Part shown: positions 23,309-52,543 of the stretch, piece by piece
Layout: every line of letters begins with the position of its first letter
How positions within the stretch are numbered: the stretch's first letter is position 1
NCBI RefSeq assembly: GCF_048593235.1
Contig: NC_133618.1
Location: 434,166,947 to 434,230,946, forward strand
Reading direction: 5' to 3'
Source of the DNA: Sminthopsis crassicaudata
Lineage: Eukaryota
Length of the DNA: 64,000 nt
Translations under genes and position numbers: made by a program
The notes under the pieces: model-generated
Told to the model about the DNA's origin: nothing
The model's input: only the letters and a program-made list of their open reading frames with translations
The model's database searches: none

Positions 23309-23474
23309 CTGGTGAGTGTCTGCTTTCCTCCCCCACTAAACCATTGCAATACATGGCATGCAGCTCAATTTCTGTGGGCGGGAAACCCTGGTCACACATT
23401 GGGCAGGACACCTGGATATGGGCCGAGAAGATGGAGGCAGACATTTCCTTCTCATTATTTTCATTGACAGCAGC
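23309..23474 (-). CDS. UIMC1: UIMC1 exon (exon 10 equivalent), first UBZ4-type zinc finger QVSCPMCDQGFPPTEIELHAMYCNG
   Basis: tgtgtccttcag|GCTGCT ... TCACCAG|gtcagc, 166 nt. CxxC-x11-H-x3-C pattern matches human QVSCPLCDQCFPPTKIERHAMYCNG. Confidence 0.95.
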
Positions 23475-28800: not shown

Positions 28801-28926
28801 CTGAGAAGTCAAAAGTAATGTTGCTTTGGAGATGGGCGACTTAAGAGACAGAAAACCCCAAAATATTTTCTATATAACAAGCTCCAGAAGTCCTCCATGC
28901 CCCATACCTGACTCCATTGCTCTTAC

Positions 28927-29030
28927 CTTAACAGGTCTTTCTTTTCTTACCTTAACAGGTCTTTCTTTATTAGACAGACATTCCTCTTCTCTCTCTAATT
29001 CAAGAAACTGAGATGGACTTAGCTGTGTCT
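28927..29030 (-). CDS. UIMC1: UIMC1 exon (exon 9 equivalent), TQLSPSQFLELEREEECLSNKERPVK[VRKERPVK]; ends at 28951 (80 nt) or 28927 (104 nt)
   Basis: ttgtattgcag|AGACACAG. N-terminal part matches human ETQLSSSETFDLERE. Two identical AAG|GTAAGA donors 24 nt apart. Confidence 0.92.
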
Positions 29031-29191
29031 CTGCAATACAAAAACAAATTCTTCTATGTGATTTCTATTCTCCAAACTCAAACTTTATTAGATAATAATT
29101 CAGTTTTCATCTTGCTATGCTGTCACACCATCTGTAAATCATTTATTAATAGTACTATATCTATCTATCTATCTATATATAGTACTATCTC

Positions 29192-29194
<3 letters not shown>

Positions 29195-29230
<36 letters not shown>
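29195..29230. repeat. (AC)18 microsatellite after a (CTAT)n run
   Basis: Direct read. Confidence 0.95.
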
Positions 29231-29234
<4 letters not shown>

Positions 29235-31480: not shown

Positions 31481-32293
31481 TTCCAAAAGAATCTCAGTGC
31501 AGTTAAACTATGTAAGCTTAAAACTATACTGATAGTTTTGGGATAGCCTGTATCATCATCATCACAATAATCATATAATAATGTATATAATAATTCTGAA
31601 GTAGAAAGAGCTACCTTTGAGAAAGAATGAGTTCTCTAACACTGGGAATTCTTATTAGTGCATATTAATTATATAATTATAATAATGATGAGAAAATCAT
31701 CACCTCCCAATGAAGCCCTTTCTACTTTCTGATTATTATGTACTTTTCTCTTGCAACCTAATTTCTATAATTTATAAAATTAAAATACAATGAGGCAGCA
31801 AGCAAGGTTAACTGTCTATCTGAAATGAACAGTCAAAAGGCAGTGAGAGTTGTAGCACAAACTCACTCTCTTGAATTGTTACAACAATACGACATTGAAC
31901 TACAACATAAAAAGAAAATCACTGTAAATAATTTTTCTTTGATAACAAGTAAGTTAGCACACCAGCTTTGCAAGATACACTAAACCAACACACAAGATCC
32001 AATGGGTCCAAAAGCAGTGGTTAATAAGCAAGTGCTATTCCTGGTGCAATGCTGGCATCTCTGAGGAGGTTGGTATGCAAACAAGGAAATAAAAGTCATG
32101 TTAATTCCAACATTTAAAAAATATTCTCTGGAAGAAGAGAGGGAGAAGAAGAACTAGAGAGTTAGAGATAGTCTACCAAATGGATTGTGGAATTTAAAGC
32201 AAATCAAAAGAACTTTAAAAAATGTACTGAAGTGGGATTTAAAAACCAAATAGAGAATATGCAAATTTTTGCAAAGTTAGCAGAGGCTCTTAC

Positions 32294-32379
32294 CTGGGCA
32301 GACTGTGATCTCTTCTGCAGAGTTTTTCTTGTCAATGACTGGACTTTTCTTACTGGTCAATATGCTTAGAGCAATGGAG
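32294..32379 (-). CDS. UIMC1: UIMC1 exon (exon 8 equivalent), SIALSILTSKKSPVIDKKNSAEEITVCP(E)
   Basis: tcctttttcag|CTCC ... TGCCCAG|gtaaga, 86 nt. Matches human LTSKRSLVLMPESSAEEITVCPE. Confidence 0.95.
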
Positions 32380-35309
32380 CTGAAAAAGGACCAACAGTCA
32401 AATTCCCAGTAAAATAAATCAGGAGTAAGATCAAAATAATGCTGAGTAGCAGTATATTAGACAATGTATCTGAAAATACAAAATGACAGCATATTTGACA
32501 TCTGTTATCCCACAAAAATGTTTAAAAAAAAAAAAAAGGAAATGTGAAAAGTGATGGTGGAAATACCAGGAGAAAAATGTGAAAATACAATAGGCTTGAA
32601 ACTTCAGTCCTAGAGAAATCACTACATAAAAAGGAACTCCTTCTAGGGAACTTACAATAGAAGGTTGAAGGGTAAGCACTGCCTGTGTGCATCAGAGAAG
32701 GCAAAAATCTCCACTCCAATCTAAGGATGTCAAAGGTTTGTTTTATATTGCCTATCTCAGGTAAGCCTGAACATTGCAGTGATTTGTACACTCAGAGCAA
32801 ATAACTTGGAGAGCTTCCTGACATTGCACTAGCTTCTTCCTACTTTGCTGTTAATTTCTTTTTTATCTCAAGATACTTCTTTCTAAAGCAGCAAAAAATA
32901 GGCTACAACTCTCCAAGCTGCCCTACAGCAAAAATCTGCCCACACAAGTTGAGCATCTATTTTGTGCAGAGTTTAACTATGCATGGCTTCTCCCTATCTG
33001 ACCTTCTGGTTCTCCCTGCCTGTTCACGGAATGCCATCTCTTCCTGACATAAGAACACGTGGTTTAGCAATGTGGGCATTCAGAGCTGGCCCCCTCTCGC
33101 TTCACTGAGCTTTACGATTAGTTTGATCAAGTATGCAAGAAAACACTTTTAAAAAAAACACAAATCCCCATGTCAACTGAGAACCACAGAGAAGAGAGAA
33201 CAGCCACCATTGATTCATGATAAATAACTAAATCCTGATAGGAAACCACAAGTGGTTTCTTTCTCTAAATAAAACATCTCAAAGCATTTGTTAGAAACCC
33301 AAGCCAGGCACAGTTTACTCTGCATGTAACATCAGGGCTCTATTCAAAGGGTCCATCACAAAACAATTTGCTGACATTTATAAAATGGGCTAATCAATTT
33401 GAAGTCAAACCACATTGCCTGCTACTCCAACTATCTCCTAGTGACAAAGCGTATAATCATTTATTAAAACCTACATCTGCTCTGCACAAAATTCACCACA
33501 ACAAAGCAAAGAGGTCCACAGGAAGCAGAAAGCTTTCTCCAGTTAAAACCACTTCCAAAACCATTTGAATAGCCTGAGAATTCAACTAAAGACATATTTT
33601 CCAGCATTGAAAGAAATTCTTCTAGGCTGGTATACAGGCTATGCTATCCCTTTGCTCCACCTACCCAAATCTCAAATAGATTTGAAGGCCTAACTCAAAT
33701 TTCAGAGTGTTTTCCTTGTCTCCTCCAATCTTCTCTATTCTCTCTCTGGTCAGAGCACTATGTGGATTCATCATCACCATTATAAGAACTGGGCCTGGGA
33801 TAAAGTTTGGCTACATAGAAAAGGAAAAAATATGAGCAAGGATAGATGGGAAGTAAGAATGATCTGTGAAAAGCCCAGATAACACATAAGTTATAACTAT
33901 GCAGGGAATACCCACCAAAGCAACTTGTAAAATCTCCATGGCTCAGAGTAGTGACTAGTCAGAGGCATAATTTGACAATAATAACTACCAATAACCAGAT
34001 TCTATCACATTGTTATAAAAAATTACAACTATATGGAAGTAAAGTATACAGGAAACATCTGGGAAAGACACCTACCTTTAAAGAGCTTATAATTTAATTA
34101 GGAAGACATGAATAGGAAATAAGGGGGAAAATAATACACAACTATATGTAGTTGTGTTAAATAAATAGTACCATGGGGATAATCAGTATGAACCCACAAA
34201 ATAGAAATTGTTACTAGAAGATGGAAGAATCAAGCTATGAAGCTGAAGCTGGTACTTGAATGAAAAGTAAAGAGGGGAAAAGCACAGAGACAAGAAGAGA
34301 TGAATTAACATGAAATAAAATTAACATATGAGTACATGAAGAAGGGTTGAGGGGCAAAAAACAGGAAAAGACCACCAAATTGGAACTGAGGTTCCTATAA
34401 ACACAATTTTTTAAAAGTCTCTGTAAAGACTATGCCAGGTGCTATTTAAACAAGATAGACTTCACCCTCAAGAAGTTTATAATATAAGGAGGAGGAAAAG
34501 ACAAGTAGATAGATAATAAAAAATATCATTAAGTACGTGCATTAGAAAAATTCAAGGACAAGTGCTGTTCCAAAGCAGAAGATCACTATGAATTGATAAA
34601 ATCAGGCAGTCTTCCTAGAGGAAGTGACACATGAATTGGACTTTACAGGATGGGCAGGATGCAACAGATTGGGGAATGGGGGGAGGGGAGGTGTTTGAGC
34701 AGGCTGAGATGAAGGGGATGAATTCCAAGCATAGGGAACAGAATGAATCATGGCAGAGAAACATGAAAACCCAGTGTTTGGGGAAGGCAGAGAGTACAAT
34801 ATGTGTGCAGGGAGTCGTAAAAAATAACGCCTACAAGGTGACAGAGTTTCAGAAAAAAAAGTTGTCTGAACAAGAGGCAACTACCTAGGTTCCACATTAT
34901 GTTTACCACTAAAATCCTAAAGTTCCCATCAGAGTAAATAATGATTAAAAAAATGAGAAAATACGAACAAATTTTTTCTTTTACCCTAGAAATATAGACT
35001 AAGTAGACCAGAAGCCTGCAGAATGACCTGAAAGAGGACACTTGTAAGCTGCAAGTGTCCTCTCTCAGAGACAGAGAAAATGCTAGGATTCATATGGTTA
35101 CATATCTGCGATAGGTTCTGTTTTTCTTGCTTTCTCAAGAGTTTAAAGAAGAGACAGAATTTAGAACTGAAAATAAAATGAAACTGATGAGGAAAAATGA
35201 ACCACCATGCCCAAAAGCCCAGGAATAGATAGACCAAGGCTAGAATACAGACCTTTAATTCAAGAAATAAAACATTATGGATGAGTAAATCAAAGACAAC
35301 ACTGACCAG

Positions 35310-40325: not shown

Positions 40326-42284
40326 AGAGGTACAGTAAAATGATGGAGAATAAAGGCAAAAATGTAATTTCATTTGCTCAAAGTAAAACTGTCTTAATAT
40401 CAATTTACTGAATGCAGATGCACAGGAAGAAGTCACAGGAACAAAACGGGAATACTACTGACAAGAAACTCTACTATACAACTCTGCTTGCTTCTTAGAG
40501 CAAGTTTTCAATTTTCCATATCAACTACCAGAATACAATTAACACAAGCCAACTCAGACCTTCAGGTAAATGATTAAATATACTCAAAAATAGGAATAAA
40601 AGTTCAACTTTTAGTCATAGAGAAAACAGTTATAACAATGACCCAGGAATGAAGTTATCAGGAAAAATGAGAGATAAAAAGATGAAAATATAAGAGCATT
40701 AAAGGCTACACTAGACTATTTGCTAAAACTCAGGAAAAACAAAATGATGTTCTATCCCAGTTCTTCAAGAAGGAAAAGAAAAAGAGATACAATACTGACA
40801 TCTAGTGTCTTTCTAACATTGCATTCTGGCAAAAAGAATACAAAAACCTAATGATATAGAAGGCTGTCAGGATACTCAACCTGTCCCTCTTTAAGAATAC
40901 ATTTTTGGATGACCAAACAACTTGGATACATACTCTTCCTGTAGGACCCACAATCTCGTTAACTTTTTCTTTCCAAAGTCATTTATTGTCTTCCAACATT
41001 TTCTATAAGCCCTTTCCTAGAAAGTCTGTCAATCAATAGCTAAACATGACTTAAAAATCCTATTTTTAAAAATTTCTGAATCTTAAAACATTTCTTTACA
41101 GCCAATTTCTCTCTCACCCTAAAAATTTTGCAAAATTTTCACACATTTTGTTTTCTTTGTTTTTGAAGACTCTCTACTTTTCAGAACTTTGCTATTCTAT
41201 CATTTCTACAATTTTCCATTTAGGAGGCCCAAGTGTGGCCTTTTCTCATCAAAGCTACATGTTCAATGGTGAGTATTTGATAGTTAAAATCCTTCCTCCC
41301 TCTGTGGAATCCTCAAATTCCAAAAAAGAAAGATCCAAAAAAAGTACAGAAAGTTATATGCATTTTACCTATTTCTTTAACGTTCTATCGCAATCCCCAA
41401 GTTAAATGAAATTCTGACTCCTTCTGTCATTTACAGAATATTAGAGTTGGAAGGGGCTTCAGAGATCAAACTAATACAAATTCCAAAATTATGCAGATAA
41501 AAAAATTGAAATATAAAAATTTACCTAAGATAATTCATCAAAGAGATAAGAGCTATTCCAATTCCAAGTCCTACGCTGTTCCTCTATAATACAGCCCATG
41601 AAAATTTTCTGTTTTTTGAGCTAGAGAACTTTTTAGGAGTCACTGGCCTTGAACACTTTTATAGCTATTCTAAGATTACTGCTCAATTCTTGACTTCAAA
41701 CTAAGTAACCTGGAACTAATCTGCTCTCCTCAGGATTCAAGCCCCTAGCATTTTTCAAGCCAGAAATGTAAATGACAACAAATTACTAAATGTTGACTAC
41801 CATGAAGTTAATTTATTCCTTTAAAGGAATATCTCTGGGTTGCACAGTAATATCAACTAAAATTTATTTTATTGTATTTAAACTTCCCTTCTGGAAGGAA
41901 AAAAAAAAATCTAGCAATGGCTAGATGACCACTTGTTGAGCATATTGTAGAGGAATCTTATTCAGATATAGATTCAGATATGGGCTTGATGACCTCTTAA
42001 ATCCCTTCTAACTAACTCTCAGGCTCTATGATTCTATAGTAACCAGAGAAATCTGGAAACAAGATTTGAAAGAACAAGATTTCTTTTCCTTTCTAGGAAT
42101 CTTTCCAGACTCCACAAAACAAGCTGGTAAAGACAATGACTCCCAAAGAAGTGACAAGTCCCAATTAATTTAAAAATGCTAGGTTTCTAGTCCCTATTAA
42201 GGAACAAAGCAGGTTAATATTAACCTATATTACTAGTTGTTCTGCAGGTAAATCACCTCCGTTCCTGACATTTCTGTTCCTTAC

Positions 42285-43421
42285 CTGATGGTGACTGGTT
42301 GTTGGTTCTTCCTCCAACAAAGGCTTTTCTTGCAAACTTTGCAATGGGCTCTTGGGGGGATTCTTACTTTTTCGGCGCCATGTGGATGCCCTTGTTTCTT
42401 TCCTTGGTTCTATGTCATCTTCTATCTCTTTTGTGACAGCTTCATTTACTCCTGTGGCTTGCCTTTCATCATGGCCCTTTTGTAGCAGGGAAGAAGAGCT
42501 AGGTAATATTGGCTCTCCAAACTCTCTCTTCTGAACAAGTTGTCTCTGAGCCAATTTCAGGCTTTTCTGATAAACTTCTAGCTGACATAGAATAACCTTA
42601 GTGTAATGGTTAGGGTCCACTCCAATAGGACAGAATGGGATGCCCCAATAATAGTGCACAGTGCCTTCAATTTCCTCTTGCAGATTCTTGACATCAATTG
42701 AATTAGGAAGGCAGAGTTGAGATGTCTTCTTTCCTTTCCCTTTTGTAGCCATGAAAGAACCACAACCCAGTCTAATGTGTTCTTTAGGCTGCTTACACTT
42801 GATATCCTCAGCCCTCTGGCTGGTTCCACTGTCAAAAAAGCTCTTATTCTCAAGAATTGGATGGTTGAGTTTATTCCCAGTTCCAGAACTGCCAGTGACT
42901 GGCTGTGCTTCCAAGTTTCCAGTGTTATTCAAACGCTTCTCTCTACCTTCAACCTCCTCTTCTTGGTTAACATCTGAGTTTGCAAACAATTTCCGAGGTA
43001 CCAACTGCCATGTTCCTATAGGAACTCGAGAAAAGGTAGGACTCAGAACAAACTTTTTTTTAACAGGAGGACTTGATAAATTATCACTAGAGTCACTTAA
43101 CACGGGTGAGCAAGATGCTTCATTGGATTTAAGTGAAAGTTGGTTCTTTTCTTGAGATAAAATTATGCTTGATAATAATGAACTTTCAACTATTTCTTGA
43201 CTTAACCTCTTCAGCATCACCAGAGGGCTTTTGGGCATTTCTGTCTGTTCAGACTGAGATCTCTGTGACAGGGATGCGACAGATAAGCGTGGAGATTCAG
43301 GGCAAGGAAACAAGCGTTCAGTAGTCTCAGAAATCACTGGTTTCTCTTGGTGGTGCTGTGCAGATATCCCAGTGAACAAAGGTACAGAGCTTGTGGCAGA
43401 AGAATCAGAAAGCTGGCAACT
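42285..43421 (-). CDS. UIMC1: UIMC1 large exon (human exons 5+6 plus the intervening 300 nt), contains Abraxas-interacting region [42 protein letters not shown]
   Basis: ttgtttcag|AGTTGC ... CATCAG|gtaagg, 1137 nt = 379 codons with no stop (ORF 42225..43430). The AIR core closely matches human [42 protein letters not shown]. Confidence 0.95.
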
Positions 43422-44366
43422 CTGAAACAAGTTACCCCACCCACCATAAAATTATTAACGTAGATGCACATTGAGGAGCAATTTTAAAAAAGGATACTGC
43501 TCCTATAAATAAGTACTTCCTCTCCAACATCTGGAAGCTCAATCTTTTTTTTTTTTAAATAACCAGTGTTAACTGACATAAATAATGGCTTAGGAATGCT
43601 GTTATTTTCAACTACAGTTCTTAGTTTTTCATCTGTGTTTACCCACTAAAATTTATATCCATGTATTAAGAATACAGATTTAGATGAATATAATTTAGAT
43701 CTCCAGAAAAACTGCCAAATTTTATTTTTAATCCATATATTTCATCCTACCTCCCTGTCTCTTCTAACAATTTTTACTCTACTTTCCCCACAGGAGAATG
43801 CTACTCTGTGTCCTCTTCTTTTTAGTCCTTTGTAATCAAATATCATTATTTTAAGAGTAAAGATGTCTAATCATTTTATAGGTTGCAAAGGACTTTCTTC
43901 ATAACAATTCTGTGAAGCATGGACTTCTTAAACCCACCTAACAAAAGAGGAAAAAGAGGCTTAGAGAAGTTAAATTACTTGCTTCGAGTCTCACAACTAA
44001 TAAGTACCAAAGTTTACACTTGAAGCCAGAACATTTAGTTCCAAGTCCATCAATTTTTCCTTTCTATGATACCACATTAAAGTAGAAAAGCATTTTTATT
44101 AATTACTGAGTGCTATTCTTCTACGACAACCTAAAAGAAAAATCTACAGAGTAAACACTTTCATACAAAAATTAACATTCAAATAAAGCTTACCCCAGTG
44201 CCTCATGAATTCTTTTTCATGGGAATTTATAAACTCCTCCTTGTTATTTTAGGTTATACTGTAAAATATTGGAAATAATATTCTTTCTAGTCAGAAGTCT
44301 GTGACTGAGGGAGTGAAGGAATGTAGCTATCCAACCCCACCAAAACTTTTAAAGAAACATAATTAC

Positions 44367-44563: not shown

Positions 44564-44693
44564 NNNNNNNNNNNNNNNNNNNNNNNNNNNNNNNNNNNNN
44601 NNNNNNNNNNNNNNNNNNNNNNNNNNNNNNNNNNNNNNNNNNNNNNNNNNNNNNNNNNNNNNNNNNNNNNNNNNNNNNNNNNNNNNNNNNNNN
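44564..44693. other. Assembly gap (130 N)
   Basis: Run of n about 70 nt upstream of the UIM exon acceptor. Confidence 1.
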
Positions 44694-51407: not shown

Positions 51408-52543
51408 TCAAACTAAAAAGTTTCTGTACAAACAATACTAATGCAAACAAGATTAGAAGGGAAGTAACAAATTGGGAAAATATTTTTACAGTTAAAGGTT
51501 CTGATAAAGGTCTCATTTCCAAAATATATAGAGAACTGACCCTAATTTATAAGAAATCAAACCATTCTCCAATTGATAAATGGTCAAAGGATATGAACAG
51601 ACAATTCTCAGATGATGAAATTGAAACTATATCCACTCATATGAAAGAGTGTTCCAAATCACTACTGATCAAAGAAATGCAAATTAAGACAACTCTGAGA
51701 TACCACTACACACCTGTCAGATTGGCTAAGATGACAAGAACAAATAATGATGAATGTTGGAGGGGATGTGGGAAAACTGGGACACTATTACATTGTTGGT
51801 GGAGTTGTGAAAGAATCCAACAATTCTGGAGAGCAATTTGGAACTATGCCCAAAAAGTTATCAAACTGTGCATACCCTTTGATCCAGCATTGCTGCTATT
51901 GGGCTTATATCCCAAAGAAATACTAAAGAGGGGAAAGGGACCTGTATGTGCCAAAATGTTTGTGGCAGTTCTTTTCATAATGGCTAGAAACTGGAAGATG
52001 AATGGATGTCCATCAATTGGAGAATGGTTGGTAAATTATGATATATGAAGATTATGGAATATTATTGCTCTGTAAGAAATGACCAGCAGGAGGAATACAG
52101 AGAGGTTTGGAAAGACTTACATCAACTGATGCTGAGTGAAATGAATAGAACCAGAAGATCTCTGTATACTTCAATGCTGTATGAAGATGTATTCTGATGG
52201 AAGTGGCTATCTTCAACATAAAGAAGATCCAACTCACTTCCAGTGGATCAATGATGGACAGAAACAACTACACCCAGAGAAGGGACACTGGGAAGTGACT
52301 GTAAATTGTTAGCACTATTGTCTATCTACCCAGGTTACTTATACCTTTGGAATCTAATACTTAACGTGCAACAAGAAAATTGGATTTACACACATATATT
52401 GTATCTAGGTTATACTGTAACACATGTAAAATGTATGGGATTGCCTGTCTTCTAGGAGAGGGAGTAGAGGGAGGGAGGGGATAATTTGGAAAAATGATTA
52501 CAAGGGATAATGTTATAAAAAAAAATTACTCATGCAAAAAAAA
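51408..52543 (+). mobile_element. Young 5'-truncated L1; ORF2 C-terminus open from the junction to about 52048, with the CCHC motif
   Basis: Perfect 15-bp TSD agaattagaatgtaa (51393-51407, 52544-52558). Translation includes CWRGCGKTGTLLHCWWSC. Confidence 0.97.

What the first reader, a model, noticed from the sequence alone, without database searches (positions are those of the whole stretch)
28921..28968. Perfect 24-nt tandem duplication across an exon-intron junction creates two identical in-frame donors
Seen: tcttaccttaacaggtctttcttt occurs twice (28921-28944, 28945-28968) with no mismatch. On the gene strand this reads ..AAA GAA AGA CCT GTT AAG|GTA AGA AAA GAA AGA CCT GTT AAG|gtaaga. Both donors are AAG|GTAAGA, so the isoforms would differ by VRKERPVK, a basic octapeptide that makes KERPVKVRKERPVK (NLS-like) just before ZnF1. 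Inference: a very recent duplication that produces a new alternative 5' splice site and could be polymorphic or species-specific.
Basis: seen in the sequence. Interest (0 to 1): 0.7.

Follow-up and report, generated by a model that had tools for sequence, protein, structure and literature searches.

The report
Duplicated splice donor in dunnart RAP80
A perfect 24-base tandem duplication across an exon-intron border of the fat-tailed dunnart DNA-repair gene RAP80/UIMC1 gives two identical splice donors, and the public annotation already lists protein forms with and without the resulting eight amino acids, so this is a neat but fairly ordinary lineage-specific splice variant.

Summary
Window 28921-28968 is an exact 2 x 24-nt tandem repeat with no other copy in the window.

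On the minus strand it covers the last 18 nt of a coding exon plus the first 6 nt of the intron. This gives two identical donors, AAG|GTAAGA, 24 nt apart and both in frame. The gene is UIMC1/RAP80 of Sminthopsis crassicaudata, and the next exon (23474-23309) encodes its first zinc finger.

RefSeq already models both outcomes. Isoform X1 (827 aa) and X2 (819 aa) differ by exactly VRKERPVK. X1, X3, X4 and X5 use the downstream donor; only X2 uses the upstream one.

No annotated RAP80 of two other dasyurids (Antechinus, Sarcophilus) or five further marsupials has the octapeptide. The duplication therefore looks specific to the dunnart lineage.

Not tested:
- So relative donor usage, polymorphism and the DNA state in relatives remain open.

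Perfect identity of 24 nt does not prove great youth, and the NLS likeness is weak. I rate it a new member of a known kind, of modest interest.

The parts
28945..28968 (-). Copy 1 of the 24-nt unit: the last 18 exon bases (coding KERPVK) plus GTAAGA. GTAAGA is intron if the upstream donor is used and codes V-R if it is read through.
28921..28944 (-). Copy 2 of the 24-nt unit, identical to copy 1: a second KERPVK plus the GTAAGA of the downstream donor.
28945..28953 (-). Upstream donor AAG|GTAAGA (last exon base 28951). It gives the 80-nt exon and the ancestral-length protein (RefSeq isoform X2).
28921..28929 (-). Downstream, intron-proximal donor AAG|GTAAGA (last exon base 28927). It gives the 104-nt exon and adds VRKERPVK (RefSeq isoforms X1, X3, X4, X5).
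28927..29030 (-). RAP80 coding exon, long form; the short form ends at 28951. The acceptor AG is at 29031-29032 and the first codon is split with the upstream exon.
23309..23474 (-). Next exon, 166 nt, encoding the first UBZ-like zinc finger of RAP80 (the C-x2-C ... H-x3-C motif).
   Evidence: (solved-structure RAP80 chain 9sqy_I, residues 490-536, E 1e-15)
32283..32381 (-). Upstream neighbouring RAP80 coding exon (approximate limits from tblastn).
42228..43421 (-). Large RAP80 exon (open frame of 401 codons; the exon limits lie inside it). It was used to identify the gene.
28902..28910 (-). Third donor-like site CAG|GTATGG, 19 nt downstream of the second donor. Out of frame and not in any RefSeq protein seen here.

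Best explanation
A 24-bp tandem duplication arose in the dunnart lineage, after its split from the Antechinus and Sarcophilus lineages. It copied the last 18 nt of a small RAP80/UIMC1 coding exon together with the first 6 nt of the following intron. The pre-mRNA therefore has two identical strong 5' splice sites, AAG|GTAAGA, 24 nt apart, competing for one acceptor 5.5 kb downstream. Splicing at the downstream (intron-proximal) site keeps the whole second unit in the mRNA and inserts VRKERPVK, in frame, into the linker a few residues before the first zinc finger. Splicing at the upstream site restores the ancestral-length protein. The downstream site appears to be the default and the upstream one a minor alternative. 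Shown: the duplication, the identity and frame of the donors, the gene identity, the existence of both protein models, and the single copy in relatives' proteins. Inferred: that both junctions are really made in vivo, their ratio, the timing, and that the octapeptide is functionally near-neutral.
For: The repeat is exact and unique. Both donors match the consensus CAGGTAAGT at 7 of 9 positions, are identical over -18 to +6, and both keep the frame. The gene is RAP80: the zinc-finger exon hits a solved RAP80 chain at E 1e-15, the large exon is 88% identical to Tasmanian devil RAP80 at E 3e-222, and the dunnart RefSeq isoforms map onto the window exons. RefSeq X1 (XP_074148308.1, 827 aa) equals X2 (XP_074148309.1, 819 aa) plus exactly VRKERPVK. 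X1, X3 (three accessions), X4 and X5 carry the octapeptide; only X2 lacks it. No other species' protein has the octapeptide, so cross-species protein alignments cannot be what supports the long models. Antechinus flavipes X1/X2, Sarcophilus X1/X2, koala, Dromiciops, Trichosurus, Petaurus and Notamacropus all read K-E-(R/S)-(P/S)-(V/I)-K (Dromiciops K-E-R-P-K) directly followed by AAVNEN. Preference for the intron-proximal of two identical strong 5' sites is documented in vitro (PMC3413131).
Against: No read-level evidence was obtained. The RefSeq proteins are translated from the same assembly, so they are not independent proof of the duplication. Model X2 could rest on cross-species protein alignments rather than RNA. 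The number of models per donor is not a measure of usage. In the closest natural analogue, the human F7 intron-7 37-bp repeat, only the most upstream of the identical donors is used (PMC1557585), which is the opposite of what I infer here. The DNA of the relatives was not seen, so a silent second copy there is not excluded.
Confidence: 0.6

Rival explanations
1. The duplication is real, but only the downstream donor is used. The octapeptide is then a fixed, constitutive insertion, and isoform X2 is an annotation product of aligning single-copy RAP80 proteins from other species.
For: Four of five protein isoforms use the downstream donor. [quoted passage not shown] Single-copy proteins of close relatives exist and would align best to the upstream junction.
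Against: To my knowledge, NCBI keeps alternative variants only when they are supported along their length, usually by RNA-seq (my knowledge of the pipeline, not checked here). At only 24 nt apart the two U1 binding sites nearly abut, so exclusive choice is less expected (inference).
Confidence: 0.2
2. The duplication is real, but the upstream donor is the one mainly used, as in the human F7 intron-7 repeat. The long models would then come from reads with short overhangs placed ambiguously on the second copy.
For: In F7, several identical donors in a 37-bp repeat spanning the exon-intron border are silent except the most upstream one (PMC1557585). Reads with 18 nt or less upstream of the junction cannot tell the two donors apart, which follows directly from the sequence.
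Against: The long form appears in X1, X3, X4 and X5, that is in nearly all variant combinations, which is not what a rare or artefactual junction should give. The F7 paper also reports that downstream sites perfectly matching the consensus are used, though without stopping use of the most upstream site; the site here matches the consensus at 7 of 9 positions.
Confidence: 0.12
3. The second copy is an assembly artefact, or is one haplotype of a polymorphism, so the reference overstates what the species carries.
For: Nothing positive. The state was simply not confirmed with independent reads.
Against: A 48-nt stretch has no repeated 31-mer and is trivial to assemble (inference). Models with the octapeptide dominate the annotation, which needs transcript support that no foreign protein can give. 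Six whole-genome runs from two samples and two studies hold 81-88% of the sampled words of the surrounding 5.8 kb, but this says nothing specific about the 48 nt.
Confidence: 0.06

Closest known systems
Human F7 intron 7: 37-bp minisatellite whose first unit spans the exon 7-intron 7 border (Borensztajn et al. 2006, PMC1557585)
   Same: A tandem repeat whose unit contains the exon-intron junction, so identical 5' splice sites lie in series a few tens of nucleotides apart and compete for one acceptor.
   Different: F7 has 5-9 units of 37 bp, which do not preserve the frame in general, and only the most upstream donor is used physiologically. Here there are two units of 24 bp, in frame, and annotated proteins correspond to both donors, with the downstream one in most models.
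Engineered pre-mRNAs with duplicated identical 5' splice sites (Hodson et al. 2012, PMC3413131, and earlier globin constructs cited in PMC1557585)
   Same: Two identical strong donors in cis. The intron-proximal site is preferred when both are occupied by U1 snRNP, which matches the apparent default here.
   Different: Those are artificial substrates with a spacing of about 174 nt, tested in vitro. This is a natural allele with a spacing of 24 nt, and its usage has not been measured.
[quoted passage not shown] 2021, PMC9052919)
   Same: A tandem duplication that duplicates a donor splice site and changes splicing.
   Different: The FGG duplication is large, gives several aberrant transcripts with premature stops, and causes disease. 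The dunnart duplication is 24 bp, in frame and apparently tolerated.
RAP80/UIMC1 of other mammals
   Same: The same gene and exon structure around the zinc-finger region. The junction lysine is followed by AAVNEN and then the C-x2-C ... H-x3-C finger.
   Different: Only the dunnart proteins carry the extra VRKERPVK among the 220-plus RAP80 proteins fetched here.

Membership tests
UIMC1 / RAP80 gene (BRCA1-A complex subunit) | C-terminal zinc-finger region with the C-x2-C ... H-x3-C motif, matching RAP80 and not other UBZ proteins | tested here: met
   exon 23310-23474 matches a solved RAP80 chain (9sqy_I, residues 490-536) at E 1e-15. The next best hit, TAX1BP1, is at E 5e-3. Pfam alone gives only sub-threshold UBZ hits.
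UIMC1 / RAP80 gene (BRCA1-A complex subunit) | Orthology of the central region, including the Abraxas-interacting stretch | tested here: met
   the 401-codon open frame is 88% identical over 100% of its length to Sarcophilus RAP80 (E 3e-222); the dunnart RefSeq RAP80 isoforms map onto the window exons.
Alternative 5' splice sites made by tandem duplication of an exon-intron junction (F7 intron-7 type) | The repeat unit contains the junction, so the donors are identical | tested here: met
   both 9-mers are AAGGTAAGA, and identity covers -18 to +6.
Alternative 5' splice sites made by tandem duplication of an exon-intron junction (F7 intron-7 type) | Both donors are actually used in mature mRNA | tested here: inconclusive
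   Only indirect evidence: RefSeq models X1 and X2 differ by exactly the 8 residues.
Alternative 5' splice sites made by tandem duplication of an exon-intron junction (F7 intron-7 type) | The frame is kept, so both products are full-length proteins | tested here: met
   the extension is 24 nt with no stop, and X1 minus the octapeptide equals X2.
Classical nuclear localisation signal | K(K/R)X(K/R) core or a run of four basic residues | tested here: not met
   neither pattern is present in the long or the short form.
Classical nuclear localisation signal | PSORT 'pat7' pattern: P followed within 3 residues by a segment with 3 basic residues out of 4 (rule recalled from memory) | tested here: met
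   P-V-KVRK is present only in the long form. This is a pattern match, not a functional test.
Lineage-specific (Sminthopsis) duplication | A single copy in the genomic DNA of other dasyurids | not testable with these tools

The most novel reading that the evidence does not exclude
The duplication is a young allele restricted to Sminthopsis, perhaps still polymorphic, in which two identical strong donors only 24 nt apart are both used at appreciable and possibly tissue-dependent levels. That would make it a natural in vivo test between the 'intron-proximal site wins' rule and the 'most upstream site wins' scanning rule for 5' splice site choice. In this reading the extra basic octapeptide would also alter the linker next to the zinc-finger region, whose human counterpart (residues 491-583) binds TRAIP (PMC4735692).
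Probability: 0.3. Interest if true: 0.5.

Novelty: new member of a known kind. Interest (0 to 1): 0.3.

Why it matters
It is a clean natural example of how a very small tandem duplication can at once create an alternative 5' splice site and a new in-frame peptide without damaging the gene. Two published paradigms predict opposite outcomes for identical donors in series: proximity (PMC3413131) and upstream scanning (PMC1557585). A naturally tolerated 24-nt case in a laboratory marsupial could be measured in many tissues. For RAP80 biology the consequence is probably small: eight residues in a linker just before the zinc-finger region. The public annotation already contains both forms, so the only new element is the explanation of their origin.

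Tried and rejected
The local tblastn was run on two subjects cut beside them.

3. The duplicated exon alone finds nothing in the solved-structure sequences or in Pfam; it is a poorly conserved linker.

4. Folding the pre-mRNA around the donors gives no significant structure (z = -1.1). Each copy forms the same small local hairpin, so structure does not distinguish the donors.

5. The exon has no ATG/GTG/TTG-started open frame that a gene caller would report on genomic contigs. The earlier searches returned no assembly-derived marsupial proteins even for the 401-codon frame, so related runs are evidently not in that collection.

6. I did not run the large representative search. The gene was already identified, and clustering at 50% identity would hide an 8-residue difference.

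Exons were searched by reference, and the joined forms examined are database proteins.

8. The earlier-findings search by words found nothing.

9. Human RAP80 entries appeared among the hits and were not followed up.

Full report
**Observation**

Window 28921-28968 is an exact tandem duplication of a 24-nt unit.
- Tandem Repeats Finder gives period 24, 2.0 copies, 100% matches and score 96. I read the sequence.
- Period-24 identity ends exactly at both borders, so there is no flanking microhomology.
- The unit has no third copy in the window at up to three mismatches, and none in 100 shuffles.
- About 2e-9 such duplications are expected by chance in 64 kb.

**Anatomy**

The coding strand is the minus strand. 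An acceptor (AG at 29032-29031) opens an exon at 29030. Each repeat unit holds 18 exon bases, coding K-E-R-P-V-K, followed by GTAAGA.

The two donors are both AAG|GTAAGA, with GT at 28950 and at 28926. They are identical from -18 to +6 and match the consensus at 7 of 9 positions. The exon is 80 nt or 104 nt long, and both lengths close the codon that is split with the upstream exon. The 24-nt extension reads VRKERPVK with no stop.

The next exon starts at 23474 behind a pyrimidine tract and AG, and ends at 23309. The intron is therefore about 5.5 kb. A third donor-like site, CAG|GTATGG, lies 19 nt beyond the second donor and is out of frame.

**Gene identity**

- Exon 23474-23310 matches a solved RAP80 chain (9sqy_I, residues 490-536) at E 1e-15. 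Other UBZ-type fingers score far behind, and Pfam gives only sub-threshold UBZ hits.
- The 401-codon open frame at 42228-43430 is 88% identical to Tasmanian devil RAP80 (E 3e-222).
- A region search with the devil protein returned the RefSeq RAP80 isoforms of Sminthopsis crassicaudata. These map onto the window exons at 61218-61069, 44495-44367, about 43421-42228, 39396-39331, 32381-32283, 29030-28951/28927 and 23474-23309.
- Residues 643-827 are not encoded in the window.

**What the annotation says about the two donors**

The cluster look-up gave five dunnart isoforms:

| Isoform | Length (aa) | Octapeptide | Other difference from X1 |
|---|---|---|---|
| X1 (XP_074148308.1) | 827 | present | none |
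| X2 (XP_074148309.1) | 819 | absent | none |
| X3 (three accessions) | 816 | present | lacks 11 N-terminal residues |
| X4 | 669 | present | lacks the C-terminus |
| X5 | 448 | present | lacks the large exon |

X1 minus VRKERPVK is exactly X2.

So X1, X3, X4 and X5 carry KERPVK-VRKERPVK-AAVNEN, which is the downstream donor. Only X2 carries KERPVK-AAVNEN, which is the upstream donor.

The octapeptide is found in no other species' protein. The long models therefore cannot come from cross-species protein alignment and must rest on dunnart transcripts; this is an inference about the pipeline. The short model could rest on either transcripts or foreign proteins. I read this as good indirect evidence that the downstream donor is used and is probably the default, and as weaker evidence that the upstream donor is also used.

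**Relatives**

All of the following read one copy only, directly followed by AAVNEN:
- Antechinus flavipes X1/X2 (KERPIK)
- Sarcophilus harrisii X1/X2 (KERPVK)
- koala, Dromiciops, Trichosurus, Petaurus, Notamacropus and an unnamed marsupial entry

Among the 220-plus RAP80 proteins fetched, only the four dunnart isoforms contain VRKERPVK. This fits an origin after the dunnart lineage left the other dasyurid lineages. It is protein-level evidence only, and a silent second copy in their DNA is not excluded.

**Age**

With 24 site pairs, the mean time to the first difference between copies is about 7-21 Myr at 1-3e-9 substitutions per site per year. The 95% bound is 21-62 Myr. Selection on the codons and the splice site would stretch this further. 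Perfect identity is compatible with a recent event but does not show one.

**Mechanism of choice**

Two published paradigms disagree.
- Identical strong 5' sites on one pre-mRNA can both bind U1 snRNP in complex E. [quoted passage not shown]
- In the human F7 gene, a 37-bp repeat spans the exon 7-intron 7 border. There only the most upstream of 5-9 identical donors is used, and only downstream sites perfectly matching the consensus are also used, without displacing it (PMC1557585).

The dunnart donor is strong, and the annotation pattern favours the proximal rule, with some use of the upstream site.

Local context does not separate the donors by structure. The fold is not significant (z = -1.1), and each copy makes the same small hairpin. 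G-runs start about 20 nt downstream of the second donor, and the purine-rich unit is present twice upstream of it. Both features would be expected to favour the downstream site; this is inference from general knowledge of intronic G-triplets and GAA-type enhancers and was not tested.

**Protein consequence**

The insertion lies in a poorly conserved linker; the exon alone has no Pfam or solved-structure match. By the alignment it sits about four residues before the stretch that aligns to residue 490 of the solved RAP80 chain. In human RAP80, residues 491-583 (the zinc-finger motif) bind TRAIP (PMC4735692).

The long form gains +3 net charge and a P-x-KVRK pattern, but no K(K/R)X(K/R) core. The conserved N-terminal PRRKKK stretch is present. 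The 'NLS-like' idea is therefore weak and probably redundant.

**What could not be done**

- The run search found six whole-genome runs of the same organism from two samples, four small libraries whose 4-5% word share equals the exon share (likely mRNA-seq), and two related organisms at about 3% divergence.
- As a result, read-level confirmation of the two copies, junction counts, polymorphism and the DNA state of relatives all remain open.

**Verdict**

This is a lineage-specific tandem duplication of a donor site in RAP80 whose two products are already in RefSeq. It is a new member of a known kind (F7 intron 7, engineered duplicated donors, the FGG junction duplication; PMC9052919). Interest is modest and would rise only if both donors prove to be used at comparable levels.

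Noticed in passing
window 28902-28910 (-): A third good donor-like site, CAG|GTATGG, lies 19 nt downstream of the second donor. Using it would shift the frame. It is in no RefSeq protein seen here.
   Followed up: partly
window 29156-29231: A compound microsatellite sits in the upstream intron, roughly 125-200 nt from the acceptor of the duplicated exon: TATC-type repeats followed by (AC)18.5 on the + strand. It is a likely polymorphic marker next to the duplication.
   Followed up: no
window 2923-3095 and 44564-44693: Two runs of N. The second lies about 70 nt upstream, in gene direction, of the RAP80 exon mapped at 44495-44367. Both were left as they are.
   Followed up: no
window 42228-43421 (-): RefSeq isoform X5 (448 aa) lacks residues 124-502 of X1, that is the whole large exon including the Abraxas-interacting stretch. 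This is a much larger predicted change than the octapeptide.
   Followed up: partly
window 51593-52048 (+): A 151-codon open frame with LINE-1 ORF2-like wording lies inside a RAP80 intron. I judged this by eye and did not search it.
   Followed up: no
I did not examine them further and sent them to no search tool.
   Followed up: no
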